Below, in pieces: positions 12,153-61,066 of a stretch of DNA of 64,000 nucleotides; positions within the stretch are counted from its first letter, which is position 1; each line of letters starts with the position of its first letter. A program made the position numbers and the translations under genes. Origin of the DNA: Bugula neritina (taxonomy: Eukaryota; Animalia; Bryozoa); the NCBI GenBank assembly GCA_964035545.1, contig OZ037770.1, forward strand, positions 1,550,001 to 1,614,000. Reading direction: 5' to 3'. The notes beneath the pieces are model-generated. The model searched no databases. It saw only the letters and a program-made list of their open reading frames with translations, and was not told the DNA's origin.

Positions 12153-15100
12153 TTAATCTATCTGATAAAACAGCACTTCTCCACAAAACCTGGGTACAAT
12201 CAGAGTATTTCCTGTCACATGGAGATCATACACATTAGAATCCCTTCTTACAGTCGAATCTGATATCTCTGTCAGCAGTTTACCTAAAACAGTATAAGTC
12301 AATATACACACTGTTTCTAACAAAACACTAAATCACCAAGATCTTCTAACTTTGTGATTTTTTATTAACTTTACTTTTTACAATAGCAAATATGGCAAGC
12401 AGACAATAACCACTTGGTGTGTGTGAATTAATATGCCATAAAATTAACCTGTGTTTCCATCCAGTATCCAGATTTTGGTGGTAGCACTCTCAATAGCTAC
12501 ATACACTCTCCCTTTGCAGAATGCTACATCCCGTGGTCCAGTCATATGTTCAGATGTCCATTCAACTTCTCCACTTGAGATATTCACTTTGAATACTTTA
12601 GAAGATTCATAATCAGACACAACAACAGAGATATCATCTACAGCACATACTGATACTTCACCGGTACTGAGTAGAGGGCAGCTTATGTGTTTTTGTACCT
12701 CCCCAGTAAGAGAGTAGACTACTAGTCGCTTGTTCTTTCTATCTGGTATAATGATTTGATCATTAACAATAGTCAGTTTGTTGAAGCCGCTGCTTTGAGC
12801 ATCAGAATGGGTCCAGCTGGTGAGGAGTTTCCCTGTCAGATCATATATTCTGACTCTGTAAGGGTTACCATATACTAAAGTATACAGTCTGTCCTTGTAT
12901 ACAGCTACACTCTCTACCCAGGCAGTAGCTTTTATAAACTCCCTGTTAGACTGATTATTCCCCTCTAATACATCTACTCCACTAAAATGTCCTACATAAG
13001 TATTACCCTGATAACTACAGACTGAAGTAGAGCAGCCAGATACAGGAACTGTATGTAAGAGATTTAATTGTTCAGGTAGAGTATCAGTAGTAGTCAGCTC
13101 ATGTTCACTGTGCACAACACTCTCTGGGAAGGTGACAATTTCTAATTCAATCTCTCTTCTTTCTCCTGTGGGTAAAATAAGAAGCAAATTATTGCAGCCT
13201 CATACAATTTACAATTACAGTTATATTAATAGTTGTGTTTAACTGTTGATACAGTATAGAATCTGCAAAATTCTCTACAAAAGGAAAAGGGAATTTCTAA
13301 CAGCTATATTCACAGTACATCACGTTATATGCCTGAACTATAGTGCTGTGTTTGTTTTTTCTTTAATATAATACATTGGACTATATAAAAGGGCGTTTTG
13401 GAGCGTACATAAAAACATACAACAACATCTAAGAATATAGTGAAACAAATTATAGGAACCTAATTGACTTCACACAATCCAATTTTGCATCAAAATATCT
13501 TGCTGTCGGTCTAGTGCGTATATGTGCATTTATAGCCGTGAGCTGAAGTAATCAGTCTCAGATTGGCTATGTATAATATTCACATTCCCAGATGAAATTT
13601 AGCTGACTCTAAATCACAGTAAACTATGAAGCATTATATACATAACACGTGAGTTAGTATAATTGTGTACATGTATTAGTAACTATAATTGCATAAGTTT
13701 TGAAATGTTGCAAGTGAGAGATTGAAGATCCTGCATGTGGGTGGCTACTAATACAAGGCTATGTTTTTCAAACAAACAAAACAAGTAAGGTAGGTAACTG
13801 AAATATTTGAAAAGGGTTTACAATATGAAAAGCTTGTTTAATTTTCTCTATAGTAATATTATAAAGTTCTTTTGATATTTTCCTTTATATCAGATAAAAA
13901 AGTACCATTTGTTATGACGATTTAGTTCAAATTGTTTCATTTATGTTTAGTTATCTAAGAACATAACTACCTATGTGAATGTTAATGGAGGTGAAGAAAA
14001 ATAAACAACCTTAAACTAATATATATGCTACTATGTAAACTTCCATAAAAATATTTGAATTTTTTTAAAGACTGAAAGGTGTCCAGCTCACTTTCAGTCA
14101 ACTTTTATAAGAGATTACTGACCTTTGACCTGTAAACCAGACTTTGATATCTCCAGAGTAGGAAACTCAAGAGCTAACAACTTTCTGATATCCTGCATTG
14201 TCTCCTCATGTCTTGTTACAATATCCACCTGCATAATAGATTCATACTGACACCAGATATCTGTATTAGTATATGCAGCATATTTACATTTCTTATTTCA
14301 TTATTCTCGGCATCATGTGCTAAATGTATACGATTGAATTAAAAATATATCTTTTATCTCGATTATATTCAAAAACATAAATACAGTATCTTTAGGCTTC
14401 ATACCTGGTGATTGTGTTTGTGTCTAGCCTCAATCTGTAGTCTTTGTCTATTCAGATCAGATAATTTAACTCCAACATTTTGTTCTGTGAACCTTTCCAG
14501 TTCCAACTTTCCATTTTCTCTCAGCTTCAGCATTTCTTCTTCCAGTTTTTTGTATTTTAACTCAATACCCCGGATCTAACAAAAGGATACAAATGTTCGG
14601 CTAAATAGTATGAGGTAAAGAAAATAACAACTACAAATACAGCTTTAAACTAAGCTAATTTTCTAATCACTAGAAAGTTTAAAATCAAAATCAAAATACC
14701 TAGAATCTATCACTAAAATGAATGCACAATATAAATATTTAAATGAGCATTTCAGTGCATGAAAGAATTGTTCAAAAATATTCAAGTTTTTGCCAAACTC
14801 CTGGTTTATCTCTAAAAAATTTTTTTTGTTTTTTGATATACTTGTCTTTTATAATCTGAAATCTTGACAAATTAATAGAGTGTACAATTACATATATACC
14901 TGTTCATCTCGGGTTTTATGGAGTGTCTCTATCATATCTCTAGTCTCACTATCATAGTCACATAATACTCTAGTCATGTGTTTTATCAACTCTTGAAACT
15001 GATCTTCTTTCTTCAGGACTTCTGATCTCATCTCATTCATTTCTCCAGACAGTTTAGCCACCAGCCCATTTATTGTCATCAGTTGGTGTGGAGAACCTGT

Positions 15101-16414
15101 ATGAAATAAAATTTTTTTTCTGTGACATCCTAATATACTTCCCACCATATACAATAAGCTGCATATTTATTTGATTATATGAAATATAACATATTTCAGT
15201 CCAAGTCTCAGTGTGTAAATTTGCTGTACTTAAATTCCAAAAATAACATTGAACCTGTATGAGTGTGCTGTTAAATTTTGAAAATGGTTAGCAGCAGCAC
15301 TGGCATCTATTTTGGCTAGTTTGTTGACTGTTGGGTTTCATTGCTTATTTCTGTGTATATTATATATTTCAAACCTATTGACTCTGCAAATTAAAATAAT
15401 ATAAAAACAAAGACTTTAAGAAACAAATATCTGGTGTGTTTTTGAACAGTCAGATAAAAAGAAACTTACCATCATCACAGTTTGGTGAGCTCTCAATGCA
15501 AGCATTACAGAGTACAGAATAACAACTCCTACATGCCATGGCATAGGGTAGTTCGCGATGTTCAGAGCATAACCTGGTTTCTAGTTTTCTAGCCTCCACT
15601 CTGTAGTCAGTCATTGTAATCATAGGGTGAGCTCCATGGAGGTCATCATGAGACTGTGATATACAAGCTTATATATAAATAGCTGTAACCAATATACGTG
15701 TTTAGCGACAGTTAGGCAACACTCCTTCAAAAATTCTAGCTCTTGAGGTCTTTATTTAAAATAATTAGCACTGTAATATATAATTTGAATTACATTGCCC
15801 TGTATCTGCTATACTGTATTATAGTTGGGAACAGACAGTGGTGATGTAACATAGTAAGCAAAAAGTGTCAATTTTCAAATAAAAATTAAGATGAGCTGTA
15901 GAGTAAGTTTTAGATATCCTCACCTCTCTGTGTTTAGCACAGAACTTAGCAGTACATGTCTTACAATAAACAACAGCTTGTTGATTGGCTACACCTTTTC
16001 TAGTACAGGTGTCACAGCATAGAGACAAGTCATCTCTTGTGTTGGAGGTAGGAAGTGAGTCTATCTCAACATCATATACTTCTCTGTAATACAAAACAGC
16101 AGCTAGCAGTGTCCCTAATGCTAGTAGGCAACTTAATCAGGATGAGTCATTGTAAGTAGATCAAACTATTAGACAAATTGTTTGAAGCTGTACCAGCAAA
16201 TAATTAGACAGGAAGCAGTATGATTCAGTGTAGGCAGAACTATGTAAACATACCTGCAGAAGGGACATCTGACTATTCTACTAACTTCAAAGCTTCCTGT
16301 CAGACATCTTGAACAGTGTATGTGTCCACAAGGTAGAGATCTTGGATCTTCCAGATCTTCCAATCTACCAACACAGAACCCACATTCTATCTGGTTGTCT
16401 CTTCCTTCAGCCAT
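12153..16414 (-). CDS. TRIM-family protein copy A (RING, B-box1, B-box2, coiled coil, NHL-like beta-propeller), ~608 aa, 8 coding exons
   Basis: Exons with GT-AG boundaries and consistent phases: 16414-16254 (MAEG..CGFC..PCGHIHCSRC..CPFC, RING), 16083-15924 (CDTC..YCKTC..FCAKH), 15653-15470 (CSEH..CRSC..LCNAC), 15096-14900, 14575-14405, 14228-14123 (coiled coil), 13165-12449 (propeller repeats), 12283-12153 (..VLFYQID*). Total 1827 nt, open throughout. Confidence 0.9.
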
Positions 16415-16780: not shown

Positions 16781-18451
16781 GATAAGAATTATTGTTTGTC
16801 TAAAATCACACTGCGCATGAGATAATGAAGTCAATATGTGTGCTTGTAAGTTAATAACTGTGCCTCTATTTACATAGATAACGCAGTGTGAAAGTATAGA
16901 ATCTAGATATGAGACTATGTTGTTTATACAATGATTTGCCACACTTGAAATACATCAGCAGTTTCATGAACCCACTAAATATATAATAAGTCTAACAATA
17001 AAGTGTGCAAGCAACTATCTGCTTTCATATACTGCTGGTGAAAGCTCAACGCAAAAATTTGATTTCATGCACAAAATCAAATTTTTATTTTACACATTCC
17101 AATATTCATAAATATTTACAAAGAGAGATGCTTGCTAAAATGTATTATATCTTGGTGAAAAACTGATCAAATAAAAGTGACAAACTTGCATTACGCTTTC
17201 AACATATTAAACTTAATATGCTATATTTTGTAGAGGTCCATGCCTCAATATATCAGTGTACTATTACTTTATATAATCTATTAATCTCAATTATGAGCAT
17301 GTTATTGTTTCTCAAAAACCCAGGACTGCATGGTTATGAAAAGTTTAGTTTATATTCACAAACATAATTTTAAGCTTTCAAGTTTTATTGTAATATACCA
17401 ATGTTTTTTTCAAATGATAGCCATATAATTTAGGAAAAAATAGCTTTCAAGAGATGTCTATTTTTCTTTGCACAATTGTCTACAATCATATTTTGATAAC
17501 AAACAATGCAATTAGATGCACTTAATTTGTTGCATATATTTGTAAACAGGATTGAAATATTACTACCTTATTGGTACTTTTAAAACCCTTACCTATTTTT
17601 TTCATTGATCTTATTTTGCTATATTGCATTAAACAGAATAAATAAATGACCCAGTTTCATCTACCATTTAAATCAGTATTCTTTTTCAAGATTATTTAGC
17701 TCAAGTACGGATGCTGCGTTAATTTGGAATTTTTTTTTGGAAAATTCAATACATAATCATATTACCGCAGACAGAAATTGTGCTTTAGTTGCTTTGCTAT
17801 AATGCCGATTAATTAACAAATGCCATTTACTGAAACTTTTGAACTACTATAGTTTCTTGTTCAGCCTGTCTGGTATGACAACTTGATCATTAACAACTAC
17901 CGGTTTGATGCAGCGCCAGTTTTGAATATCAGGATGAATCCAGCTGGTGACGAGTTTCCCTGTTAGTGCATGTACTCAGACTGTGTGAGGTTTACCATAT
18001 ACTAAAATATATAGTCTGTCTTTGTATACAGCTACACTGTGTACCACTAAATAGATATTTTAAACCCCTTGCTAGACAGATTATTCCCCTCGATTATAGC
18101 TTCTCCCTCATCACTAAGTCCAACATAAAATTGCCGAGATAACTACAAACTGAAGTACAGTCACCAGATACAGGAACTGTATGTAGGAGAGTTAATTATA
18201 TAGGTAGAGTATCAGTAGTAGTCAGCTCGTGTTCAGTGTGCATACGTTTCTCTGAAAGGAGAAAATATTTAATTCAATCTCTCTTCTCTCTCCTGCAAGT
18301 AGAATAAAAACTAAGTTATTGCAGTGTGATTCAACCTATGATGGTAGTTGTTCAGGTAGCTTAAGAACGCCACCTATATGTTTAATATTTGGTCTTTCTC
18401 GCTGTTGCAATAATAAAATGATCAAATATTATATATTTACGGCATATGCAG

Positions 18452-18554
<103 letters not shown>

Positions 18555-18667
18555 TTCTATAATTAAAAATGAATCAAAGAACTCAATATTTCGAAAAATA
18601 GAGTATTTATATTTGGTACACTAACAATACTAATTTTAAAACAAAATCACTCAAGCGTACACACAAC

Positions 18668-18712
18668 GACCTGATGATCGTAGCTCGCACTACGTGAAAC
18701 AATATTGTAGTC
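18668..18712 (+). ncRNA. Minimal type I hammerhead ribozyme in a ~215-bp insert within a TA tract
   Basis: gac-CTGATGA-t-cgtag-ctcgca-ctacg-t-GAAAC-aatatt-GTA-gtc; palindromic stem III (acaatattgt); stem I only 3 bp. Confidence 0.7.
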
Positions 18713-18762
18713 AATAGAATGAAGATCTAAGTTTATTTTTATATCCAAAATTGTATTAGTAC

Positions 18763-18800
<38 letters not shown>

Positions 18801-19715
18801 CGATAAGTTAAATGCACCAATTACTAGACTCACTTAGTTCAGGAGATACTTCATTTAGGCTGAGGTAAAGATATTCAGAAAGGTTTAAAAGTTACAACCG
18901 CAACATGAGGCAAAAAAAAATTGGCCTTTGGTACAGTTAAGAAGATGATGCCAAAGAATGGAAATTGTGATGATTATGCTAAATTTTAAAACTTCTACAA
19001 GAAGTTGGTTGGTCAAAGACTGCTGAGTAACTTTGGTAAAAGCTTTCACAAAAAACCTAATAAGATGAAAAGTTTTCCACTCAGATTCAGTCAAATATGC
19101 AAGCTTAAAGCAAAGCCTGTAAACATGTTTAATAGACTACTAACCTTTGACCTGTAAACCAGACTTTGATATCTCTAGAGTAGGAAACTCAAGAGCTAAC
19201 AACTTTCTGATATCCTTCATTGTCTTCTCATGTCCTGTTATAATATCCACCTGAATATTAGAATAATATCAATACCAGAGTTTTGCAATATTATATGAGT
19301 ATCATCTGTACATATCTCATTTCAATTATTGGCGTCATGTATTAGTTGTATATTACAATCAAATTAAAAATATAGTTTTATTTAAATCAAAAAATATAAT
19401 TACAGGTTCTAGGTTCCATACCTGGTGATTGTGTTTATGTCTAGCCTCAATCTGTAATCTATGTCTATTAAGATCAGATAATTTAACTCCAACATTTTGT
19501 TCTGTGAATCTTTCCAGTTCCAACTTCACATTTTCTCTCAATTTCAGCAACTCTTGCTCCAGTTTTTTGTATTTTAACTCAATACTCTGAATCTATCAAT
19601 AGGATTAGTGCACAATATGCATATTTGAATAAACATTTTAGTGCATGAAAATAATTGTTCAAAAATATTCAGTGCTTTAGCAAGTTTTTTTGTCTATCTC
19701 TAGAAGATATAGTAT

Positions 19716-20111
19716 TGTAGTTTTATGCACTACCAAGTTGGGTGCTTTTGTATGCACCAGTAATTATTGCATGTCCACAATGAGGTTATGGAAAGAAGCG
19801 AAATAGTTGACGTTTTAAGTAAGAGCCGTATTGAAATTATAATTACATATATTTAGAGTCATAGCGGAAGTAGCAAAAGAGTACAGATTGGAAAACGGTT
19901 ACACAGGTTAACCTATCTAGCTGACAGTGATTTTCCAACTCAAGCTGAGTGCCGGAAGGTATAACAGTTTATATCCAAAAGGTTGGTCCTGATTGGGTGG
20001 TATAGGGTTCCTGTGGTATTGCCGTAGTGAGTGACATGGTGCCGCAAAGAGTTGCGGTAACGCTAACGGAGTTGTGGCTATTTGGAACTTTATGCCTCAT
20101 ATTATAATACA
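19716..20111. mobile_element. Possible solo LTR in intron 4 of copy B
   Basis: TGTA...TACA-bounded, GC-richer block absent from intron 4 of A/C/D; no clean TSD. Confidence 0.4.
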
Positions 20112-22756
20112 AATACTTAGGTAGAGGTTCTAGGAGATATATTTCTCACAGCCATTTTTAATAGCTTTTTAAATTTTAATCCAATTGCCTTCTTTTAGCT
20201 AAACTTCTAACATGTTTATGGGCTGTTTTTATATACCTGTTCATCCCGTGTTTTATGGAGTGTCTCTATCATATCTCTAGTCTCATTATCATAGTCACAT
20301 AATACTCCAGTCATGTGTTTCATCAACCCTTGAAACTGATCTTCTTTCTTCAGAATTTCTGATCTCATTTTATGCATTTCTCCAGAGAGCTTTGCCACCA
20401 GCCCCTTCAATGTCATCAGTTTGTGTGGAGAGCCTGTATAGACAAAACAATTCTTTGACCAGGCATTCTTCTTACTGTAGTATCTGTTAGATTGTACAAT
20501 ATACTTCACTTCAAGTGTCAGTTTGGTAGTTTGCTGTACTTACATTATAGAATTATTAATGAGCCTGCGTGTATGTTATAATTTTGAAAATATTTAGTAG
20601 TATTACCAGCATATTGAAACATCAGATAGATAGAAACTTACCATTATCACAGTTTGGTGAGATCTCAATGCAGGCATTACAGAGTACGGAGTGACAAGTC
20701 TGACATCCCATAGTGTAGAGTAGCTTTGAGTGTGTAGAGCATAGCCTGGGTTCTAGTTTTCTAGCCTCTACTCTGTAGTCAGTCATTGTGATCATAGGAT
20801 GTGGTCCATGGAGATCATCATGTGACTACGAAACACATTTTTACAACTCGTATTTGTTTTTAGCTTTGATTAGGCAGCAGGCCTCCAAAATTGAAATCTT
20901 TATTGGAAAGGATTTGCATCAGCACAAACTGCTTTGTTATATGTAGCATACATGTACTGTAGTTAGAAAAAGACATAATATATTGTCGCAGTGTCCGTTT
21001 TCAAAAGTAAAACTCAACAAATTTTACATAAATTCATAGTTTTGACTGCCAGGAAAGCAAAACTTTGAAATAACATATATTATATTTGCGTGTTAAATAT
21101 TCTCACCTCTCTGTGTTTAGCACAGAACTTAGCAGTACATGTCTTACAATAAACAACAGCTTGTTGATTGGCTACACCTTTTCTAGTGCAGGTGTCACAG
21201 CATAAAGACAAGTCATCTCTTGTGTTGGAGGTAGAAAGTGAGTCTATCTCAACATCATATACTTCCCTAAAATATAGGAAACAATTAGACAAATTGTTTG
21301 AAGCTGTACCTGCAAATAATTGGACAGGAAGCAGTATGATTCAGTGTAGGCAGAACTATGTGAACATACCTGCAGAAAGGACATCTGACTATTTTACTAA
21401 CTTCAAAGCTTCCTGTCAGACATCTTAAACAGTGTATGTGTCCACAAGGTAGAGATCTTGGATCTTCCAGATCTTCTAATCTACCAACACAGAACCCACA
21501 TTCTATCTGGTTTTCTCCTCCTTCAGCCATTGTTTATAGCTCTGAGAATCTTCCGCTGTAATTTGCAATAGTGAAAAGCTCAAAGAAAAGTTTATGAAAT
21601 AACTAAAAACAACAAAAAGATCACCAAAAAGCTATTGTATTTAACAATTACATAAACTCAGTAACGTCTACTAAATATGTATGTAGATTTAGAGTTAGAT
21701 TTGTTTAATTAGTCTTGGTTATGTAAAAAGTTTACACACTTTCTATTGCCATCGTACCTGTGAAGCAGCAACAAACTCAAAAAAAGTAAAAATTAAACCT
21801 ATTATATATATTATTTTGAGAATTTACGAGACATTTTGAAAAAAAACTTATACTTAAAACAAGTAAGAAAACACAATTAATTGCACTTTGACATGTCACT
21901 GCGGATTAGAGATTTACTGAACTATATAAGTGTCAATAAAATCACAAAATAAAATACTCACCAACTTTGCAATATTATATACTTCTTAGCTGAGATAAGT
22001 TTAATCGAAGTCTGGTAGCTTAAGTTGAAGTCCTGGAGAGGTGTGATGGAAAAGCAGCTATCTACTAAATATATTATAATGATGGGTGGCTAAAACTAGT
22101 TTAAAATTGATATATAGACATGCTCTCCGTTCATGGTTCATATCTGTACCTTATCATGTATATATATAGCAGATAAGAATTCTTGTTTGTTTAAATCACA
22201 CTGAGTATATAAGATGCTAGGCTCAATATGTATGCTTCTATATAGCTAAGTTAGTAACTGTGCGTCTACCTACACTGATAACACAGCGTGCAAGAATAGA
22301 AGTGAGACTTATTTAATATTGTTTATATAATGATTTGCCACACTTGAAATACATCAGTAGTTTTGTAGACCCACTAAATGTTTGAACCAGCAATATTGAA
22401 GTGTGCAAGAAAATGCTTGTTTTCAAATATGCCTACTGCTGAAAAAAATTTATCATGAAATCAAAGTTACGTTCTGCACATTCTAATTTATAAATATTTG
22501 GTAAATCTTGTAATAATGTTTGCTAGAGTTAACGTAATAACTGTGACTCTATCTACTCTGTGAGGGTCTAAACATGATACTGTTTGAAGTTTGTATCTTA
22601 GTCTGCCTTGTTCAAAATGGCCTCAGTTGTTACATAACATTATTACTAAAGTGTGCAGGCAAATCATTATAACTACTTGTTCTGCTGACAAAGCTCATTA
22701 TGCAGGTAAATACCAATTTACCATAAACTAATAAGCTTATTCACTGATGATTGTAT

Positions 22757-23121: not shown

Positions 23122-24324
23122 TGTTTTTGCATGCCATCATATAGTATCTCATATTATTCATATTGGATATGTTTTTTTTTAAATGTTCCTATTGCCAATA
23201 TAACTAGATCACTTTTAAAAATTCTTTTCTGTGCAAAATCTGTTTGGTAAATATAGTTGAATTTTACTTAGAATGGCAATACTAACAATAGTCAGCATAT
23301 CTCATAAACGACACTGCCCCCAAATTCTATTATTGTATGAGAGCATAACTACATATACAAATTGACGTGTAACCGCAACCCTTCTTTTGTTAGTACCAGG
23401 TCAAAGGTTCACTCTATTTACTATTTATCTTCTTGGATGCATCTCCACTGCTGAGATAATTACAAGATTAATTAATTAGAAGAGAGTTAGAGTTAAAAGA
23501 AAGTGACGGCGGCGGGAAAAGATTAAAATTCTCAGACTACATATAGCCGCTAAAATACCTGTTGCCCCTGATTACATCAAGGATAATGTAATATATTAAT
23601 GCTATCTATTTGCATTTAATATCATAAACTTAAAGAAAAACCTCTAGTTATTTATTTATTTTGGGTCTAATAAAATATTAAAAATTGTAGTTATGACAAC
23701 TGTATGAAGACATTGTAAGCATTGGGCAGTCCCAAATAAATGCATTTGCCAGTACCTTTGTAACGAATGCAGTTAATCCAAATATTTATGCCAACAACAA
23801 CACATAAGGATAATCATTATTGTCAAAGAATACTTCATCAAACTGCAAAAAAAACTTGAGTCTAAATCTGGAAAGGCTTATTAAATAATTATATTTCAAA
23901 ACAATTAGCATAAAGCCTTAAAAAACAAGCTTAAATAAGCCTTCCTTATAGGTGTCTGCATGCTTGAAACAATTTCCTTGTTATTAAAAAATCAGTATTT
24001 AAAAAATATTACTTTACAAATTAGAAAAGCGTGGCAATAGTATTTGATTGACTTGAAAACGTATAGAAAATGTTAATTTGAAAAGTTCATTTTTTATTAT
24101 TTTGAGCTAAATATACATGGTTATATTTTTGAATATTATTTCTTATTATGTAATGCAGCTGATATATTAAAAAGTCAAACATGTGACTATATGCATTACA
24201 GCTAAAAAATTAAATATTTATATATGATATACCTGAAAAATAAATATATGTAAGTCTGCGTTATTTCTGTGTATGTATGTGTGCAATAATATATTAGACA
24301 ATGTTAATCTCATGTCATGAATAT

Positions 24325-24438
24325 TTAATCCATCTGATAAAACAGCACTTTATGTGCTCGGCTTCTGGGGACAATCAGAGTATTTCCTGTTACATGAAGA
24401 TCACACACATCAGATTCAAGTCTCACAGCAGAATCTGA
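24325..24438 (-). pseudogene. Orphan terminal exon (exon 8) of a further, deleted TRIM paralog
   Basis: Reads SDSAVRLESDVCDLHVTGNTLIVPRSRAHKVLFYQMD*, homologous to exon 8 of A/C/D. A diverged copy of the 3' flank lies at ~23700-24320. Homology stops abruptly at ~24438 with no acceptor. Confidence 0.8.
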
Positions 24439-25404
24439 GCTAGTAGAGTCAATCAAGTAATAATATAATATCTGTAAATAGGTATAGTTTTGTGACTAAA
24501 TAATATTTATTACTAACATCTGCATTGGGTTATAATCAAAAGCACCAAAATATATAAAAGTAACTTTTTGATACGTTATATAATACCTTTTTAAGATATC
24601 TTTCAAAAAATTAATCGCATCAAAATTTATAGTCGTCTTGTTGAGGTCCAGTTTTTGTTTTCATAACGCATTTCATTTCATAACAGCAATCATCAGTATT
24701 AGAGCATTCATCTAGAAATAATTGCACCAAAAGGCAAATATATATAGAAATTTTTATTCAACAGAGGTAAAGTTTCCTGTAAGACAGCCAAGCTTCATGA
24801 TATCTTTTAGGAGTTGTACGACCTTCACTTTACGCTGGCTGAAGCTGGTTAAAGCACTGGCTTGCTAAACACGAGACCATGTGGGTTCAATCACGAGTAA
24901 CCATCATTGGAGATGTTAGGAAGAGTATTCAGTCATAATTACTTCTGTAGCCTGCTTTTCAAACTCCCTTTCCATCAAAGGTTTCTCACATGGATAGTAA
25001 TTATAAACTTGCATGAGCTTTTTGTTATAATTATATAATGTGATTTGATTGGAAAAATTTATTAGATTACTTTGCCAACTGACTGAGTGCTCATGAAGAT
25101 ATAACCATCATATTACGAGATAACTTACTGCTTTGAAGATAAAGTTGAAAGTAACGTACCCCCTCTCTTTTTACAATAGTTTTCTATCTTCATCTTGGCA
25201 GCAATAACTAACATATACTCCAGGAGGTCAGCTAAAGAGCTTCTAAACAGGCATTTAAAATAAAATATACCTATTAGTATACATGTAAATATTATAATGA
25301 ATTTAAGTATAGTATATGTTGTAGTATACATATGGTACAATTATAGTATATATTGTAATGACGTGGTATGTATTATAATACAATTAGTATATCTATGTGA
25401 ATAA

Positions 25405-25605
25405 GGGAGCAGCCGTGGTCTAGGGGTTAGAGTGTTTGCCTATAGTGAATGCAGGTTCATGGGTTCGAGCCCAGACAAAAACCATTGGCGATACTAAGAA
25501 AAACATTCAGACATACTTGCTTCTGAGCCTCATTTAAATAAGTCCTTAGCCCACTTTACCAAAAACCTTTTCCATCAGGGGTTTCTCATAGGGATAGTGA
25601 CTATA
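25405..25605 (+). mobile_element. tRNA-derived SINE, same family
   Basis: A box tggtctagggg, B box ggttcgagccc, body matches the other copies. The paralogous copy at 53684-53728 is truncated by a TA tract. Older related copies at ~24830-25010 and ~53080-53230. Confidence 0.75.
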
Positions 25606-25950
25606 TACAAACTTGCATGAGTATATGTATTGTGAATAAAATTGTACATGCATGCTTAGCTACATAGTTTACAATGATAACTATTACTACACCAATTATA
25701 GATGTCAATGTATTTCAATATATGTAGGGTGAGTTGTTTATTGCACTCTATAACCAAATTTGTACACGGAAAATAAAACTTAGTTAGAAGCCACCAGAAT
25801 GTAATAGGTTGTGGCATTTTTTATGCTGATTACAAATAATTATAAGACAACAAGTTGAGAGGTAATCCTGCACAAATAAAGTATATATTGAACAGCTGCA
25901 TAGTAATTTTCTGATTAAAATCTTTTGTTTTTGGACCAAAAATTTAGCAA

Positions 25951-26220
<270 letters not shown>

Positions 26221-40516: not shown

Positions 40517-43500
40517 TTAATCTATCTGATAAAACAGCACTTCTCTACAAAACCTGGGTACAATCAGAGTATTTCCTGTCACATGGAGATCATACACATT
40601 AGAATCCCTTCTTACAGTCGAATCTGATATCTCTGTCAGCAGTTTACCTAAAACAGTATAAGTCAATATACACACTGTTTCTAACAAAACACTAAATCAC
40701 CAAGATCTTCTAACTTTGTGATTTTTTATTAACTTTACTTTTTACAATAGCAAATATGGCAAGCAGACAATAACCACTTGGTGTGTGTGAATTAATATGC
40801 CATAAAATTAACCTGTGTTTCCATCCAGTATCCAGATTTTGGTGGTAGCACTCTCAATAGCTACATACACTCTCCCTTTGCAAAATGCTACATCCCGTGG
40901 TCCAGTCATATGTTCAGATGTCCATTCAACTTCTCCACTTGAAATATTCACTTTGAATACTTTAGAGGAATTGTAATCAGACACAACAACAGAGAGATCA
41001 TCTACAGCACATACTGATACTTTACTGGTACCAAGTAGAGGGCAGCTTATGTGTTTTTGTACCTTCCCAGTAAGAGAGTAGACCACCAGTCGCTTGTTCT
41101 TTCTATCTGGTATAATGATTTGATCATTAACAACAGCCAGTTTGTTGAAGTCGAGTAAGAATGTTTTAGCATCAGAATGGGTCCAGCTGGTGATGAGTTT
41201 CCCTGTCAGATCATATATTCTGACTCTGTAAGGGTTACCATATACTAAAGTATACAGTCTGTCCTTGTATACAGCTACACTGTCTACACAGTCAGTAGCT
41301 GTTTTAAACTCCCTGCTAGACTGATTATTCTCCTCTATTATAGCTACTCCCTCACCCCATAGTCCAACATAAGTATTACCCTGATAACTACAGACTGAAG
41401 TACAGTAGCCAGACACAGGAACTGTATGTAAGAGAGTTAATTGTTTAGGTAAAGTATCAGCAGTTGTCAGCTCATGCTTAGTGTGCAAAATTATCTCTGG
41501 TAATGAGACAATTTCCAATTCAATCTCTCTTCTTTCTCCTGCAAGTAAAACAAGAAGCAAATTATTGCAGCGTCATATACAATTTACAATTACAGTTATA
41601 TTAATAGTTGTGTTTAACTGTTGATACAGTATAGAATCTGCAAAATTCTCTACAAAAGGAAAAGGGAATTTCTAACAGCTATATTCACAGTACATCACGT
41701 TATATGCCTGAACTATAGTGCTGTGTTTGTTTCTTCTTTAATATAATACATTGAACTATATAAAAGGGCGTTTTAGAGCGTACATAAAACATACAACAAC
41801 ATCTAAGAATATAGTGGAACAAATTATAGGAACCTAATTGACTTCACACAATCCAATTTTGCATCAAAATATCTTGCTGTCGGTCTAGTGCATATATATG
41901 TGCATTTATAGCCGTGAGCTGTGCTACTATGTAAACTTCCATAAAAATATTTGAATTTTTTTAAAGACCGAAAGGTGTCCAGCTCACTTTCAGTCAACTT
42001 TTATAAGAGATTACTCACTTTTGACCTGTAAACCAGACTTTGATATCTCTAGAGTAGGAAACTCAATAGATAACAACTTTCTGATATCCTGCATTGTCTC
42101 CTCATGTCTTGTTACAATATCTACCTGCATAATAGATTCGTACTGACACCAGAGATTTGTATTAGTATATGCAGCATATTTACATTTCTTATTTCAATTA
42201 TCGGCATCATGTGCTAGACGTATGCAATCAAATCAAAAATATATTTTGTATATCAATTGTATTCAAAAACATAAATACAGTCTCTTTAGGCTTCATACCT
42301 GGTGATTGTGTTTATGTCTAGCCTCAATCTGTAGTCTTTGTCTAGTGAGATCAGATAATTTCACTGCAACATTTTGTTCTGTGAATCTTTCCAGTTCCAA
42401 CTTTCCATTTTCTCTCAGCTTCAGCAACTTTTCTTCCAGATTTTTGTATTTTAACTCAATACTCCAAATCTATCAATAGGATTAGTGCACGATATACATA
42501 CTCGAAAGAAAATTTCACTAAATGAAAATAATTGTTCAAAAGCATTCAAATTTTTGCCAAGCTCCTGGTTTATCTCTAAAAGTTAGTTTTCTATATTTTA
42601 ATGTACTTGTCTTTTTTGATCTGAAATTTTAATGACTTTATAGAGTTTGTATATATAACCTGTTCATCCCTTGTTCTCTGTAGTGTCTCTATCATATCTC
42701 TAGTCTCACTATCATAGTCACATAATACTCCAGTCATGTGTTTCACCAAATCCTGAAACTGATCTTCTTTCTTCAGGATTTCTGATCTCATCTCATTCAT
42801 TTCTCCAGACAGTTTAGCCACTAGCCCATTCAATGTGATCAGTTGGTGTGGAGAACCTGCATAAAAATAATTTTAATAAACAACATCCTATAATATATTT
42901 CCCACCATATACAATATGCTGCATATTTATTTGATTATATGAAATAAAATATATTTCAGTCCAAGTCTCAGTTTTTTTGACTGTTGGGTTTCATTGCTTA
43001 TTTCTTTGGTGAGTGTATATTATATATTTCAAACCTATTGACTCTGCAGATTAAAATAATATAAAAACAAAGACTTTAAGAAACAAGTATTTGGTGTGTT
43101 TTTGAACAGTCAGATAAAAAGAAACTTACCATCATCACAGTTTGGTGAGCTCTCAATGCAAGCATTACAGAGTACAGAATGACAACTCCTACATGCCATG
43201 ACATAGGGTAGTTCGGGATGTTTAGAGCATAGCCTGGTTTCTAGTTTTCTAGCCTCCACTCTGTAGTCAGCCATTGTAATCATAGGGTGGGGTCCATGGA
43301 GTTCATCATGAGACTGTGATATACAAGCTTATATAAATAGCTGTAACCAATATACATGTTTAGCGACAGTTAGGCAACACTCCTTCAAAAATTCTAGCTC
43401 TTGAGGTCTTTATTTAAAATAATTAGCACTGTAATATATAATTTGAATTACATTGCCCTGTATCTGCTATACTGTATAGTTGGGAACAAACAGTGGTGAT

Positions 43501-44002
43501 GTAACATAGTAAGCAAAAAGTGTCAATTTTCAAATAAAAATTAAGATGAGCTGTAGAGTAAGTTTTAGATATTCTCACCTCTCTGTGTTTAGCACAGAAC
43601 TTAGCAGTACATGTCTTACAATAAACAACAGCTTGTTGATTGGCTACACCTTTTCTAGTGCAGGTTTCACAGCATAGAGACAAGTCATCTCTTGTGTTGG
43701 AGGTAGGAAGTGAGTCTATCTCAACATCATATACTTCCCTAAAATATAGGAAACAATTAGACAAATTGTTTGAAGCTATACCCGCAAATAATTGGACAGG
43801 AAGCAGTATGATTCAGTGTAGGCAGAACTATGTAAGCATACCTGCAGAAAGGACATCTGAGCATTCTACTAACTTCAAAGCTTCCTGTCAGACATCTTAA
43901 ACAGTGTATGTGTCCACAAGGTAGAGATCTTGGATCTACCAGATCTTCTAATCTACCAACACAGAACCCACATTCTATCTGGTTGTCTCCTCCTTCAGCC
44001 AT
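40517..44002 (-). CDS. TRIM-family protein copy C (RING, 2 B-boxes, coiled coil, beta-propeller), ~611 aa
   Basis: Exons 44002-43842, 43738-43579, 43313-43130, 42856-42660, 42469-42299, 42124-42019, 41538-40813, 40647-40517; GT-AG boundaries, 1836 nt, open. Confidence 0.9.
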
Positions 44003-49587: not shown

Positions 49588-49800
49588 ACTCACGCACGTT
49601 TAGAGTCACTATCCCTGTGAGAAACCCCTGATGGAAAGGGTTTTTGTTAAAGCGGGCTAAGGACTTATTTAAATAAGGCACAGGGGCAATTATGACTGGA
49701 TGCTTTTCCTAACATCACCAATGACCTTTGTCAGGGCTCGCACACATGACCTTCGTGTTTACTAGGCAAACGCTCTAACCCCTAGACCACAGCTGCTCCC
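49588..49800 (-). mobile_element. tRNA-derived SINE, same family
   Basis: Same head and body; TSD tgagtattctYatattat at 49570-49587 and 49801-49818 (1 mismatch). Confidence 0.8.
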
Positions 49801-52800
49801 TGAGTATTCTCATATTATGTTGTATGTGTATATAAATACTATAATAAGTCATTTTATTGACAGATAAATTGACAGATAAATTGACTTTCAATTGGGTAGT
49901 AAACTCACCTGTAATGATTTAACCACAAAAGCACATATACAAACTGCTATAAAATTTTGAGTCATGCAAATACATCAAATACTAGCTTATATAACTGCTA
50001 TAGTTACACAGAGTATAATAATTTACACAGTATTTGTTGGTTTATATATTAATATGCTCTCTGAAATAGTCATTTTAGTCAAACGGAAACTAATCTAGTG
50101 GATCGTTACCATGGAAACCAACTAGACTCTATAGCATGATTATGCGTATATATAAATATTATTTCCTTTTTTGGGTCTAGTGCTCAGCTAATTATATGTT
50201 TTTAGAGAAACCACGAGTCATAGTTTTGAAATCTAAAGTGACAGCCAATTAAATAAACATGTTTATATTATCAGCCACTTTTTGTATCACAAGGCACATC
50301 GTTTCAAACTTCAAACTAAATTACTATGCAGGAGGCAAAGTCTTGACATATAAATACACTAATTACTATGACTTGCTGGTAAAACTGCTGCATAAGTTCT
50401 TCCTGGTGTAAAATTTTCTTAACATATTATATTGAACAGTTCAAATGACAGCTTCAATTGTTGGGGTGAGTCTGATAAACAAGATTCATCAAATACAACT
50501 GGTTCAGTATTATATTGTCTCTCTCTTTGCTATCTCTCTAAGTAGAGTATGATGTCTGTCTACAGCTGTTTGTGAATATAGCTTGATGACTTCTGAGTCC
50601 TATCAGTGATTTGCATATGCGGAAGCATTTGAGGTCATCATGCACTCGGTGTGTCTGTTGAGCTAAGCCTTCTTGGGGCCAGCCCTATGTATTATATAAA
50701 TTTAATTCTAACAAGGCAAACAAGTTAAATAGTTACAAATGTATCCAAGGAAACCAGATGCATGCATGCACCTGGTTTCGTTGTCACCATTAAAATCAAT
50801 TTAAGTTAGATTTATTATGGTTCAATTTGTTAAATAAGGTAGTTGAAAAATCTTTTTACTTCAGGCATGACTCATATTATACTGACAACCAATTTAATTA
50901 TAGCACCAGAAACTATTTATTGTAAAACTTCAAACCAATAATTAATACGAAATGTATTGATAATGAGAAAAAATTTGTGTTATGTAAATATATTGACAAC
51001 TAGCTTATATAAGAGATAGTTACTTAGAGTAATCGATATAAACCGGTAATTTATGCAAAATTAAAGGAGCTTTGAGGTCAAAGCTTAAAAGATTAATAAA
51101 TATTTTGCCAAAAAGTTGTCTCATTAAACTGTCTGCATTTGATGGTATATATAAAGAGAATGTTTTCATACCTACTTCATTGTTACGTCTTTGTTTATGC
51201 ATTCAAGTAGTGCTTGTAAAAAACAGGCTTTGCAAATAGTTCCTTGGTTCCTGCATCCAGGATAAATATTTTGGATATGAATCTGTGTTTAAGTGCTACA
51301 AGTAAGATTCTAGTCATTTTGATGTTATTCTTTTGTTTTCAACAAATCACAAGTAGGAGACCAAGAGATTCTAGATTGAGACGTGACAGATGGCCTTGGC
51401 TTGTAAGTGAAATTCCATTGTCCATAGTTGTTTCTTCTTCCAATGTTTACAAAGGTTAACCATCCTTACATATTATATACATGATAAATGTATTTGATGA
51501 TAATAATTGTGCTTTAGTAGTTTCGAGACTCATGTTGCTATATAATAACATTTTCAGGATTCATTCAATTTCTTATATATTATTATTCTTTCTAAACAAT
51601 TATGTAATGCTGATTGACAAGTTTGTCTCTGTGTCGAATTTTATATATATATTATATACATGATAGATGTTTTTGATAATAATAATTGTGCTTTAGTAGT
51701 TTAATGAGACTATCATTATTCTTTCTAAATAATTATGTAATGCTGATTGACGTTTTTTATGCACTCTCAATAGTTTTTGAATGTTAAAGCTATTTTTGAA
51801 ATTTATTTTCATAGGAAACTGTAAGATTAAGATTTGCAAACCGAAGAGAATTTAGATTCGGAAGATTGAGATTTTGCAGACCAAGATATGTATGTCAACA
51901 TAGAAAAAATGAATGCACTCCAAGGATATTCTGTTTTTAAGATCAATTATATGCATAGGCCTATATTATTTTCTACTATACCACAACTTTTTGTTGCAGA
52001 ATGTAAATGCATTAAACAATTTTAATATTCTATGTCTGAACTCTTCAATTTAAATATTTCTAATTATAAGTGTGCCAAAAGTATTTTTATGAATCCTTAT
52101 AATGTAAATAAATTTAGCAGACTGTGTGAGTTTCCGTTTTGATTTCGGAGTATTAATTGCTATAAAATTCAAATAAGTTATTGTCAGTTTATTGAAATAT
52201 TATATATTTTTCTAACAAATTTATTCTAAATTATTTGAATTGGAGCAAATATAGCAAATATAGCTGAATACAAGGCTGTGTATGTTTTTCTCTATAATAA
52301 CTACTATAGCCTACTATTATCGCTATAATTATACTTTTATTAAAAAAAAACTTGATACTTGCAAATTTTAACAGAAATGGGATACACAATTATATAGTAA
52401 TGTTTTAGGTTTTACCTTTATTGTAAAATATTAAGCTAGATTATATTGTTGAAACAATATATTTTAAAAACTTCCCACAAACATAACATGTTGCATATAT
52501 ACGAGGAAGTTCAGTCATCCTATTGGTATAGCCTTTGCCCTTTTTCAACCGAAACAAGACCATCTTGGGGGTCTCAATCCAATCAGCCATCACTGAGTTC
52601 TTTCTATTACTACTATCCCATTGCCCATTGACAGATGAATAAATAGTTAGTGTACGTATTATAGATGCTTGAAAGCTGTAGATTAGTTTTGATTTAAATA
52701 TATTTAGCTTAGCCATGGTATATAGGTCAAGTGCTAGAGCCGTGATTGGTGCAGCTACTGAGCTATAGTAGAGTTAATCAGGTAATATAATATCTGTATA

Positions 52801-56918: not shown

Positions 56919-59900
56919 TCAATCTATCTGATAAAAGAGCACTTCTCCACAAGACCTGGGTACAATCAGAGTATTTCCTGTCACATGAAGATCATGCGCA
57001 GAAGATTCCCTTCTTGCAGTCGAATCTGATATCTCTTTCAGCAGTTTACCTGAAGTAGCATAAGTCAATATACACAACTGTTACTATCAAAACACTGAAT
57101 CACCAAGATCCTCTAACTCTGTGATTTTTTATTTACTTTACTTTTTGCAATAGAAAGTATGGCAAGCAGACAATAACCACGCGGTGTATGTGAATTAATA
57201 TGCCATAAAATTAACCTGTGTTTCCATTCAGTATCCAGACTCTGGTGGTAGCATTCCCAATAGCTACATACACTCTTCCTTTGCTGTATGCTACACCCCG
57301 TGGTCTAGTCACACGTTCAGATGTCCATTCAACTTCTCCACTTGAAATATTCACTTTGAATACTTTAGAGGAATTGTAATCAGACACAATAACAGAGATA
57401 TCATCTACAGCACATACTGATACTTTACCGGTACCAAGTAGAGGGCAGCTTATGTGTTTCTGTACCTTCACAGTAAGAGAGTAGACTACTAGTCTCTTGT
57501 TCTTTCTATCTGGTATAATGATTTGATCATTAACAACAGTCAGTTTGTTGAAGTCGGGTAAGAATGTTGTAGCATCGGAATGGGTCCAGCTGGTGATGAG
57601 TTTCCCTGTCAGATCATGTACTCTGACTGTGTAGGGTTTACCATCTACTAAAGTATACAGTCTGTCTTTGTACACAGCTACACTGTGTACCCAGTCAGTA
57701 GCTGTTATAAACTTCCTGCTAGACTGATTATTCTCCTCTATTATATCTACTCTTCCATCACCTAGTCCAACGTAAGTACTACCGTGGTAACTACAGACTG
57801 AAGTAGAGTAGCCAGACACAGAAGCTGTATGTAGGAGAGTTAATTGTTTAGGTAGAGTATCAGTAGTAGTCAGCTCATGTTCAGTGTGCACAACACTTTC
57901 TGGAAAGGAGACAATTTCTAATTCAATCTCTCTTCTCTCTCCTGTAAGCAAAATAAGAAGCAAATTATTGCAGCGTCATACAATTTACAATTACAGTTAT
58001 ATTAATAGTTGTGTTTAACAGTTGATACAGTATAGAATCTGCAAAATTCTCTACAAAAGGAAAAGGGAATTTCTAACAGCTATATTCACAGTACATCACG
58101 TTATATGCCTGAACTATGGCGCTGTGTTTGTTTCTTCTTTAATATAATACATTGAACTATATAAAAGGGCATTTTAGAGCGTACATAAAACATACAACAA
58201 CATCTAAGAATATAGTGGAACAAATTATAGGAACCTAATTGACTTCACACAATCCAATTTTGCATCAAAATATCTTGCTGTCGGTCAAGTGCGTATATGT
58301 GCATTTATAGCCATGAGCTGAAGTAATCAGTCTCAGATTGGCTATGTATAATATTCACATTCCCAGATGAAATTTAGCTGACTCTAAATCAAAGTAAACT
58401 ATGAAGCATTATATACATAACACGTGAGTTAGTATATAATTGTGTACATGTATTAGTAACTAATTGCATAAGTTTGGGAATGTTGCAAGTGAGAGATTGA
58501 AGATCCTGCATGTGGTGGCTACTAATACAATGCCATGTTTTTCAAACAAACAAAACAAGTAAGGTAGGTAACTGAAATATTTGAAAAGGGCCGTTTACAA
58601 TATGAAAAGCCTGTTTAATTTTCTCTATAGTAATATTATAAAGTTCTTTTGATATTTTCCTTTATATCAGATAAAAAAGTACCATTTGTTTATTTGGCAG
58701 ATTTAATTCAAACTGTTTCATCTATGTTTAGTTATCTAAGAACATAACTACCTATGTGAATGTTAATGGAGGTGAAGAAAAATAAACAACCTTAAACTAA
58801 TATATATGCTACTATGTAAACTTCCATAAAAATATTTGAAATTTTTTAAAGACCAAAAGGTGTCCAGCTCACTTTCAGTCAACTTTTATAAGATATTACT
58901 GACCTTTGACCTGTAAACCAGACTTTGATATCTCCAGAGTAGGAAACTCAATAGATAACAAATTTCTGATTTCCTTCATTGTCTCCTCATGTCTTGTTAC
59001 AATATCTACCTGCATAATAGATTCATATACCAACACTAGAGTTCTGTATTAGTATATGCAGCATATTTATATTTCTCATTTCATTATTCTCGGCATCATG
59101 TGCTAAATGTATACGATCGAATTAAAAATATATCTTTTATCTCGATTATATTCAAAAACATAGATACAGTATCTTTAGGCTTCATACCTGGTGATTGTGT
59201 TTGTGTCTACCCTCAATCTGTAGTCTTTGTCTATTGAGATCAGATAATTTAACTCCAACATTTTGTTCTGTGAATCTTTCCAGTTCCAACTTCCCATTTT
59301 CTCTCAGCTTCAGCAACTCTTCTTCCAGATTTTTGTATTTCAACTCAATACTCCGAATCTATCAATAGGATTAGTGCACGATATACATACTCGAAAGAAA
59401 ATTTCACTAAATGAAAATAATTGTTCAAAAACATTCAAATTTTTGCCAAGCTCCTGGTTTATCTCTAAAAATTAGTTTTCTATATTTAAATGTACATGTC
59501 TTTTTTGATCTGAAATTCTAATAACTTTATAAAGTTTGTATATATAACCTGTTCATCCCTTGTTCTGTGGAGTGTCTCCATCATATCTCTAGTCTCACTA
59601 TCATAGTCACACAATACTCTAGTCATGTGTTTCACCAAATCTTGAAACTGATCTTCTTTCTTCAGGATTTCTGATCTCATCTTATCCATTTCTTCAGACA
59701 GTTTAGCCACCAGCCCATTCAATGTGATCAGTTGGTGTGGAGAACCTGTATGAAACAGAATATTTGTCTGCGACATCCTAATCTACTTTCCACCAGATAC
59801 AATATGCTGCATATTTATTTGATTATATGAAATATAATATATTTCAGTCCAAGTCTCAGTTTGTAAATTTGCTGTACTTAAATTTCAAAAATAACATTGA

Positions 59901-61066
59901 ACCTGTATGAGTGTGTTGTTTAATTTTGAAAATGGTTAGCGGCAGCACTGGCATCTATTTTGGCTAGTTTGTTGACTGTTGGGTTTCATTGCTTATTTCT
60001 GCGGTGAGTATATATATTATATATTTCAAACCTATTGACTCTGCAGATTAAAACAATATAAAAACAAAGACTTTAAGAAACAAGTATTTGGTGTGTTTTT
60101 GAATAATTAAATAAAAAGAAACTTACCATCATCACAGTTTGGTGAGCTCTCAATGCAAGCATTACAAAGTACAGAATAACAACTCCTACATGCCATGGCA
60201 TAGGGTAGTTCAGGATGTTTAGAGCATAGCCTGGTTTTTAGTTTTCTAGCCTCCACTCTGTAGTCAGTCATTGTAATCATAGGGTGAGCTCCATGGAGGT
60301 CATCATGAGACTGTGATATACAAGCTTATATAAATAGCTGTAACCAATATACGTGTTTAGCGACAGTTAGGCAACACTCCTTCAAAAATTCTAGCTCTTG
60401 AGGTCTTTATTTAAAATAATTAGCACTGTAATATATAATTTGAATTACATTGCCCTGTATCTGCTATACTGTATAGTTGGGAACAGACAGTGGTGATGTA
60501 ACATAGTAAGCAAAAAGTGTCAATTTTCAAATAAAAATTAAGATGAGCTGTAGAGTAAGTTTTAGATATCCTCACCTCTCTGTGTTTAGCACAGAACTTA
60601 GCAGTACATGTCTTACAATAAACAACAGCTTGTTGATTGGCTACACCTTTTCTAGTACAGGTGTCACAGCATAGAGACAAGTCATCTCTTGTGTTGGAGG
60701 TAGGAAGTGAGTCTATCTCAACATCATAAACTTCTCTGTAATACAAAACAGCAGCTAGCAGTCTCTCAAATGCTAGTAGGCTACTTAATCAGGATAAGTC
60801 ATTGTAAGCAGATCGAACTATTAGACAAATTGTTTGAAGCTATACCCGCAAATAATCGGACAGGAAGCAGTATGATTCAGTGTAGGCAGAACTATGTAAA
60901 CATACCTGCAGAAGGGACATCTGACTATTCTACTAACTTCAAAGCTTCCTGTCAGACATTTTAAACAGTGTATGTGTCCACAAGGTAGAAATCTTGGATC
61001 TTCCAGATCTTCTAATCTACCAACACAGAACCCACATTCTATCTGGTTGTCTCTTCCTTCAGCCAT
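56919..61066 (-). CDS. TRIM-family protein copy D (RING, 2 B-boxes, coiled coil, beta-propeller), ~611 aa
   Basis: Exons 61066-60906, 60735-60576, 60310-60127, 59745-59549, 59358-59188, 59009-58904, 57941-57216, 57049-56919 (TGA); GT-AG boundaries, 1836 nt, open. Confidence 0.9.

What the first reader, a model, noticed from the sequence alone, without database searches (positions are those of the whole stretch)
12153..61066. TRIM beta-propeller gene array with variation focused on one face of the propeller: candidate diversifying recognition system
Seen: RING/B-box exons and intron 6 are almost identical among A, C and D, but the adjacent propeller exons differ in short clustered spots (A/C/D): GCST/GYCT/GYST, GHFS-G/GLWGEG/GLGDGR, AWVES/DCVDS/DWVHS, YGNPYR/YGNPYR/DGKPYT, QS--SG/KTFLLD/TTFLPD, STGE/GTSK/GTGK, YES/YNS/YNS, HMTGPRD/HMTGPRD/RVTRPRG, IES/IES/IGN, VRRDSNVY/VRRDSNVY/ARRESSAH, RFCG/RFCR/RSCG. 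Indels are in frame. Established: NHL propellers such as Brat and LIN-41/TRIM71 bind ligands with the top face formed by d-a and b-c loops, and antiviral TRIM clusters (TRIM5, fish finTRIMs) diversify their C-terminal recognition domain. Inference: the variable spots fall in d-a and b-c loops, so this looks like an E3-ligase sensor family under diversifying selection (immunity or self/non-self recognition) that uses a propeller rather than B30.2.
Basis: partly seen in the sequence, partly recalled or inferred. Interest (0 to 1): 0.85.

Follow-up and report, generated by a model that had tools for sequence, protein, structure and literature searches.

The report
Hypervariable-faced TRIM-NHL ligase gene array
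These are tandem copies of a ubiquitin-ligase gene from a family of well over 150 members in a bryozoan. The enzyme half is conserved, while about 20 positions on the binding face of the propeller are driven to change, as expected for an inherited repertoire of intracellular sensors of foreign molecules.

Summary
Confirmed, with corrections. The window holds three intact 8-exon genes (A, C, D) encoding RING, two B-boxes, a coiled coil and a six-bladed NHL propeller. It also holds two copies with a dead propeller exon (B, E) and an exon-8 relic. The genome (a bryozoan, probably Bugula neritina) has roughly 180 related propeller exons in tandem arrays.

A/C/D alone are too few to show selection (propeller dN/dS about 1.0-1.3), and 'intron 6 versus exon 7' is partly a conversion mosaic. 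With paralogs, site models give 7-10% of propeller codons dN/dS 5-10 (2dlnL 156-243), against 0 for the N-terminal half. This survives indel masking, multi-hit models, per-segment trees and null simulations, and recurs at equivalent sites in three other arrays. The sites lie at strand-a starts and b-c loops of all six blades, the Brat/LIN41 ligand face. They are Tyr-rich and neutral, not a basic RNA patch. The dead exons of B/E show no hotspot there.

Most likely an intracellular non-self-recognition E3 repertoire, like TRIM5/finTRIM but built on NHL; ligand and immune role are inferred. The scan already reported this family on other DNA of this genome (s1-444292, s1-444352).

The parts
12153..16414 (-). 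Gene A, intact, 608 aa. Coding exons 16414-16254 (RING), 16083-15924 (B-box 1), 15653-15470 (B-box 2), 15096-14900, 14575-14405 (coiled coil), 14228-14123, 13165-12449 (linker and blades 1-5), 12283-12153 (blade 5d and blade 6)
   Evidence: Pfam RING E=1e-7, B-box E=2e-4, NHL E=1e-4
12449..13165 (-). Exon 7 of A, carrying most positively selected codons (A residues 371, 386, 387, 409, 411, 427, 449-453, 470, 496, 512, 513, 538, 552; codons at 13034-12489)
12153..12283 (-). Exon 8 of A; selected codons at A residues 582 (12236-12234) and 600 (12182-12180)
12187..12518 (-). Gene-conversion tract: A identical to C at 32 consecutive variable sites (end of exon 7, intron 7, most of exon 8), while D differs by about 9%
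   Evidence: permutation P=1e-4
17846..21530 (-). Copy B. Exons 1-6 open (326 codons, RING-B1-B2-CC, all splice sites intact). Exon 7 (18292-17846) frameshifted, with stops, cut off at about codon 148; no exon 8. Possible propeller-less TRIM
24322..24438 (-). Relic of an exon 8, with related 3' flank to about 23735, from a further lost copy
40517..44002 (-). Gene C, intact, 611 aa. Exons 44002-43842, 43738-43579, 43313-43130, 42856-42660, 42469-42299, 42124-42019, 41538-40813, 40647-40517. Chimera: B/E-type upstream region and 103-bp intron 1, A/D-type from intron 2 on
56919..61066 (-). Gene D, intact, 611 aa. Exons 61066-60906, 60735-60576, 60310-60127, 59745-59549, 59358-59188, 59009-58904, 57941-57216, 57049-56919
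62497..64000 (-). Copy E, twin of B. Exon 5 63985-63815, exon 6 63643-63538, dead exon 7 62944-62497. Exons 1-4 lie just beyond the window (start at G000:C6:1615931) and are open

Best explanation
A lineage-expanded family of TRIM-NHL E3 ubiquitin ligases that works as a germline-encoded repertoire of intracellular non-self sensors. SHOWN: the architecture (C3HC4 RING with Arg after the last Cys, two B-boxes, coiled-coil region, six-bladed NHL propeller, no filamin domain, no signal peptide); about 180 copies in tandem arrays; purifying selection on the N-terminal half; recurrent positive selection at about 20 positions around the top face of the propeller; birth, death, chimera formation and conversion. 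INFERRED by analogy with TRIM5alpha, TRIM21 and finTRIMs (own knowledge): the coiled coil dimerises; each paralog's propeller face binds a different fast-evolving ligand, most likely a protein of viruses or intracellular parasites/symbionts; B-box-driven clustering on the target activates the RING and leads to ubiquitination, degradation or signalling. Point substitution under selection renews the face, and unequal crossover and conversion reshuffle blades between neighbours.
For: M1a/M2a 2dlnL is 155.6 for 11 own-genome genes and 230-243 for 19 genes; omega2 6-10 on 7-10% of codons; M8a/M8 228. It holds with indel-flanking codons masked (37-116), with double/triple hits plus site-rate variation (52-117), and in each of five segments on its own tree (19-43). 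Null simulations with up to 20 genealogies give at most 4.7. The N-terminal half of the same 10 genes gives 2dlnL 0 and omega 0.31, against 143 for the propeller. Three arrays on C3 and C6 that contain no window gene give 112-146 at equivalent sites. Selected sites: 11 of 47 top-loop vs 0 of 32 bottom-loop, P=0.002. All 65 genes sampled have a different 20-site string (mean 15.6 differences); these sites are 18.6% aromatic vs 3.4% in bottom loops, with mean net charge -0.1. The dead exon 7 of B vs E shows no excess on top-face codons (OR 1.1, P=0.83). Best fold matches are Mei-P26, Brat and TRIM2 NHL, Z 27-28. Family members are spliced at the predicted introns in public contigs.
Against: No ligand, E3 assay, induction or tissue data. 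Averaged over all top-loop codons, omega is only about 1.4-1.5 (1.0 in the C3 array), and synonymous rates there are about 1.4-1.8 times those of the core, so single-site omega values may be inflated. Positive selection does not identify the opponent. The codon models are my own implementation with naive empirical Bayes posteriors, not codeml.
Confidence: 0.65

Rival explanations
1. Intragenomic conflict: the ligases target proteins or RNAs of transposons or other selfish elements, or act in germ-line drive and suppression, rather than against pathogens.
For: It predicts the same arms-race signature. The genome has young mobile elements (a 4.2-kb repeat at 98-99% identity in 36 or more places; Penelope-like fragments). 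TRIM-NHL proteins are germ-line regulators in flies (PMC9070667).
Against: No direct evidence. A repertoire of about 180 different faces fits many external ligands at least as well.
Confidence: 0.13
2. Diversified RNA-binding regulators of the Brat/LIN41 type, each paralog reading different host or viral RNA elements.
For: The same face binds RNA in Brat, Mei-P26 and LIN41, and its specificity evolves fast (PMC5908797, PMC9070667). Brat R875 aligns with selected site 84 (residue number inferred from the construct offset).
Against: No conserved basic patch: Lys+Arg are 7.5% at the variable sites and net charge ranges from -6 to +4. Host mRNA regulators would not be expected to show recurrent positive selection in every array.
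Confidence: 0.1
3. Allorecognition or gamete self/non-self recognition: downstream intracellular specificity factors, comparable to plant S-locus F-box proteins (own knowledge).
For: Bryozoans are colonial. Collaborative non-self recognition by many E3 adaptors has precedent in plants. B. neritina is highly heterozygous (PMC7576161).
Against: The genes lie in many arrays on most large contigs, not at one locus. The proteins are cytosolic, whereas known animal allorecognition factors are surface proteins (own knowledge).
Confidence: 0.07
4. No adaptive diversification: relaxed surface loops, mutational or conversion hotspots, misalignment, or mis-assembled alleles create the pattern.
For: A/C/D alone give omega near 1. 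Conversion tracts exist. Synonymous rate is somewhat raised on the top face. The A-B and D-E blocks resemble each other and read depth could not separate alleles from paralogs.
Against: Bottom loops are under purifying selection (omega 0.5-0.7). The dead exons show no hotspot. The signal survives masking, multi-hit models, segment trees and null simulations, and recurs in three unrelated arrays.
Confidence: 0.04

Closest known systems
TRIM-NHL proteins (class VII, subfamily C: Mei-P26, Brat, NHL-2, TRIM2/3, TRIM32, TRIM71/LIN41)
   Same: RING, two B-boxes, coiled coil and six-bladed NHL propeller closed by an N-terminal outer strand. Z 26-28 to Mei-P26, Brat, TRIM2, NHL-2 and LIN41; profile E=2e-12 to Brat. 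The variable face is their ligand face.
   Different: Known members are few and conserved; here about 180 tandem copies have a positively selected face. No filamin domain, no conserved basic RNA patch, only 11-17% identity to the solved NHL domains.
TRIM5alpha and fish finTRIM/btr/hltr clusters
   Same: Multigene tandem clusters, conserved RBCC, positive selection and recombination in the C-terminal ligand-binding loops (PMC3137616).
   Different: They use B30.2/PRY-SPRY; this family uses an NHL propeller and is in a lophotrochozoan. No antiviral function is shown here.
Nematode and plant F-box and MATH-BTB adaptor expansions
   Same: Birth-death ubiquitin-ligase families with positive selection in the substrate-binding domain only, proposed to degrade foreign proteins (as summarised in PMC4334554).
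   Different: Those are cullin adaptors; here RING and receptor are one polypeptide.
Watersipora subatra 'uncharacterized' and 'tripartite motif-containing protein 2-like' proteins (e.g. XP_067944401.1, XP_067940339.1)
   Same: Same length (about 600 aa) and propeller family; many divergent paralogs on several chromosomes.
   Different: Annotated only. They fall outside the clades sampled from this genome, with weak support; no evolutionary analysis found in the library.

Membership tests
TRIM-NHL | N-terminal C3HC4 RING | tested here: met
   Pfam zf-C3HC4 29.1 bits above cut-off 21; zf-RING_2 E=1e-7; all eight ligands present in A-E
TRIM-NHL | One or two B-boxes after the RING | tested here: met
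   Exon 3 matches zf-B_box E=1.7e-4 (22.1 bits, just under cut-off 24.1); exon 2 matches a B-box-like model weakly (E=0.005); Cys/His patterns seen directly
TRIM-NHL | Coiled coil between B-box and C-terminal domain | tested here: inconclusive
   No coil predictor run. Residues 170-290 are E/K/L-rich, and the same region of a Watersipora homolog weakly matches coiled-coil Pfam families
TRIM-NHL | Six-bladed NHL beta-propeller | tested here: met
   Model of natural spliced homolog P0048: 24 strands, pLDDT 91.9; top six structural matches are all TRIM-NHL domains; NHL Pfam above cut-off for exon 7 of A, C and D; Atlas hits NHL
TRIM-NHL | E3 ligase activity | not testable with these tools
   RING intact and under purifying selection (omega 0.29); activity not assayed
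RNA-binding TRIM-NHL (Brat, LIN41, Mei-P26) | Conserved basic patch on the top face | tested here: not met
   At 20 variable top-face sites in 65 genes Lys+Arg are 7.5%, Asp+Glu 8.0%, mean net charge -0.1. Composition only; no electrostatic surface was computed
TRIM5/finTRIM (class IV) | B30.2/PRY-SPRY C-terminal domain | tested here: not met
   The C-terminal domain is a beta-propeller
TRIM5/finTRIM (class IV) | Tandem expansion with positive selection confined to ligand-binding loops | tested here: met
TRIM5/finTRIM (class IV) | Induction by virus or restriction of a pathogen | not testable with these tools
   Only contigs were available; no challenge RNA data

The most novel reading that the evidence does not exclude
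Bryozoans have turned the TRIM-NHL scaffold, known as a small conserved group of developmental RNA regulators, into a germline repertoire of about 180 cytosolic, paratope-like E3 ligases for non-self recognition. Retained propeller-less copies (B, E) may act as RBCC-only partners or decoys.
Probability: 0.55. Interest if true: 0.85.

Novelty: new variant of a known kind. Interest (0 to 1): 0.72.

Why it matters
Arms-race evolution of TRIM ligases has been described for B30.2 domains in vertebrates (PMC3137616), while NHL-type TRIMs are treated as conserved developmental regulators. A large NHL-based repertoire with a positively selected binding face would be an independent origin of TRIM-type intracellular recognition in a phylum whose immune system is little studied. 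It gives testable candidates: about 20 defined residues per gene. It would also be a natural library of propeller binders fused to an E3. No paper describing it turned up in 10 library searches; most subscription journals are not covered.

Tried and rejected
- Pairwise dN/dS on A/C/D alone: omega about 1, not significant except A-C in blades 1-3; rejected as sufficient evidence.
- Intron 6 as a neutral yardstick: rejected, because introns range from 0 to 20%.
- Mutational hotspot at top-face codons: rejected by the B/E dead-exon control (28 differences, so moderate power).
- B/E dead exons as donor cassettes for the variable patches: not supported; they are 18-20% from every close intact exon 7 and share no obvious tract; not tested formally.
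- Read depth for A/D as alleles: only contigs were available. An A-specific 437-bp contig at depth 56 and shared contigs at 117-324 fit several copies but cannot separate alleles from paralogs, and run X1 may be the source sample.
- Exons were searched one by one by reference, and the full six-blade fold comes from the natural spliced homolog P0048. Exons were joined only inside local scripts.
- Only 65 intact exon-7 sequences from this genome were analysed; the C8 arrays were not tested for selection.
- Two paper look-ups by DOI and one by a PMC id recalled from memory found nothing; the F-box work is cited through PMC4334554.
Full report
ANATOMY. The window is G000:C6:1550001-1614000 of a 216-Mb genome in 321 contigs. 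On the minus strand lie three intact genes, A (16414-12153), C (44002-40517) and D (61066-56919). Each has eight coding exons with GT-AG sites and encodes 608-611 aa. Exon 1 is a C3HC4 RING, exons 2 and 3 are B-boxes, exons 4-5 a probable coiled coil, and exons 7-8 a beta-propeller. B (21530-17846) and E (from C6:1615931 to window 62497) have open exons 1-6. Their exon 7 shares two frameshifts, a stop and a truncation at about codon 148, and there is no exon 8. A relic exon 8 lies at 24322-24438.

ORGANISM AND FAMILY. Full-length relatives are Watersipora subatra proteins named 'uncharacterized' or 'TRIM2-like', so the host is a bryozoan. Bugula neritina fits by size (214-221 Mb, PMC7576161) and by a 'symbiont metagenome' holder; the species is an inference. 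Exon 7 finds 150 matches, the scoring cap, of which about 135 are long and stop-free, in tandem arrays on contigs C1-C9. RING exons lie a few kb upstream of many of them. A more distant propeller from C8 finds about 48 further loci. About 180 loci is therefore a lower-bound estimate. Public contigs skip predicted introns 1, 2 and 5 in family members, and one contig encodes a spliced coiled coil plus whole propeller (P0048). Expression of A, C or D themselves was not shown.

FOLD. Exon 7 of A folds with pLDDT 85.5 into four-stranded blades. The spliced homolog gives the full 24-strand, six-blade propeller with pLDDT 91.9. Its six best structural matches are the NHL domains of Mei-P26 (Z 28.3, rmsd 2.3), Brat, TRIM2, NHL-2, LIN41 and TRIM71; the profile hits Brat at E=2e-12. 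As in LIN41, the first strand completes blade 6, and LIN41's ligand face is the one opposite its N-terminal domain (PMC5908797); here that corresponds to the d-a and b-c loops (inference from topology). In the profile alignment Brat R875, at the centre of its RNA-binding surface (PMC9070667), falls on exon-7 site 84; the residue number is inferred from the construct offset. I had strand assignments but no coordinates, so faces were assigned from secondary structure.

THE OBSERVATION. Among A/C/D, 28 of 64 top-loop columns vary against 5 of 37 bottom-loop columns (P=0.002). Two points need correction. Introns differ by 0-20% depending on pair and position. A equals C over 12518-12187 (P=1e-4), C equals D in intron 4, and C carries a B/E-type upstream region and intron 1, so the array is a recombination mosaic and intron 6 is no clock. 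And with three genes the propeller's dN/dS is only about 0.9-1.4.

SELECTION. I fitted codon site models (own GY94 implementation) to exon 7. For 11 own-genome paralogs M1a/M2a gives 2dlnL 155.6 with omega2 9.4 on 7% of codons. For 19 sequences, including contigs from another sample, it gives 230-243; M8a/M8 gives 228. Masking two codons on each side of every indel leaves 37-116. Five segments, each on its own tree, all stay significant (19-43). Allowing double and triple substitutions and site-rate variation leaves 52-117. Twenty-four null simulations with up to 20 genealogies never exceed 4.7. In the same ten genes the N-terminal 326 codons give 2dlnL 0 and omega 0.31, and the propeller gives 143.

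Three other arrays (C3:30.8-31.3 Mb, C6:10.3-10.5 Mb, C6:9.1 and 11.5 Mb), analysed without any window gene, give 112-146 with largely the same sites. The sites come in pairs around the ring, strand-a start and b-c loop: 44/46 with 59/60, 82/84 with 98-100, 122-127 with 143, 167-169 with 185/186, 209/211 with 225, and 255 with 273 in exon 8 (add 327 for A numbering). Bottom loops have omega 0.5-0.7 and the core 0.3-0.7. Caveat: pooled top-loop omega is only about 1.4-1.5 (1.0 in the C3 array) and synonymous rates are raised there. As a control, differences between the dead exons of B and E are spread evenly (9 of 134 top-face vs 19 of 311 other nucleotides; P=0.83), so these codons are not simply hypermutable.

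CHEMISTRY OF THE FACE. In 65 intact genes every 20-site string is different (mean 15.6 differences). The sites are 12.9% Tyr and 18.6% aromatic, against 0.8% and 3.4% in bottom loops, with balanced charge. That resembles antibody-like protein-binding surfaces (own knowledge) more than the basic cavities of LIN41 and Brat (PMC5908797).

PROPELLER-LESS COPIES. On the B/E lineage the dead exon 7 is compatible with neutrality (stem omega 0.9). Exons 1-6 have omega 0.20 on the stem (P=0.0006) and 0.40 on the terminal branches after the shared lesions (P=0.035), with all splice sites intact. B/E may therefore be kept as RBCC-only proteins. This is tentative: the estimates are noisy and conversion from intact neighbours could contribute.

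MECHANISM. The best reading (0.65) is an intracellular non-self recognition repertoire: a conserved dimeric RBCC engine with a paralog-specific propeller face that binds fast-evolving foreign ligands and triggers ubiquitination. The evolutionary half is shown; ligand, E3 activity and immune role are inferred from TRIM5/finTRIM (PMC3137616) and F-box/MATH-BTB (PMC4334554) precedent. Rivals are genomic conflict (0.13), diversified RNA regulators (0.10), allorecognition (0.07) and artefact (0.04). Whether A-B and D-E are paralogs or mis-joined alleles is unresolved, but it does not affect the selection result.

CLASSIFICATION. By architecture and fold these are TRIM-NHL proteins. They are not class IV TRIMs (no B30.2) and lack the basic patch of the RNA-binding members. 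They evolve like TRIM5 and finTRIMs. No description was found in the paper library. Two earlier reports of this scan describe the same family elsewhere in this genome; the tests here were run independently and agree, which is not independent support. Verdict: new variant of a known kind, interest 0.72.

Noticed in passing
window 1483-5740: A young non-coding dispersed repeat of about 4.2 kb, 98-99% identical at 36 or more places genome-wide, with no ORF over 92 aa. One copy lies between the RING exon and exon 6 of the neighbouring paralog at C6:1455850-1484700, whose two ends are 28 kb apart.
   Followed up: partly
window 47251-48353 (+) and 7825-8990: Penelope-like retroelement fragments (reverse-transcriptase end and GIY-YIG-like ORFs, judged from the translations; weak GIY-YIG Pfam hit for 8165-8536). 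7987-8144 is a perfect inverted copy of 8683-8840.
   Followed up: no
window 26216-37140: About 11 kb between TA microsatellites with no long ORF. It contains a 91% inverted repeat (29810-30358 / 31637-32207) and an 80-copy 30-bp tandem array (34291-36717). It separates the A-B block from C.
   Followed up: no
window 24904-25017, 25394-25625, 38058-38273, 49589-49814: A short dispersed repeat of about 220 bp in both orientations, SINE-like by appearance.
   Followed up: no
L080 (Logan SRR4125604 contig), 86-1495: A spliced transcript encoding coiled coil plus full propeller but no RING or B-boxes: the reverse of B/E, a possible receptor-only family member.
   Followed up: partly
G000:C8:6.6-7.2 Mb and 9.3-9.4 Mb (L088, L089): A second, distant TRIM-propeller subfamily of about 48 loci, about a quarter with a stop in the propeller exon; not tested for selection.
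   Followed up: partly
L073 (JGI 3300002729): A gene with B/E-type intron sizes and an N-terminal half that groups with B/E, but with an intact propeller exon, from another sample.
   Followed up: partly
window 17846-18292 vs 62497-62944: The dead exon 7 differs between B and E by 6.3%, against 2.6% in their introns (P=3e-4); probably patchy conversion, unexplained.
   Followed up: partly
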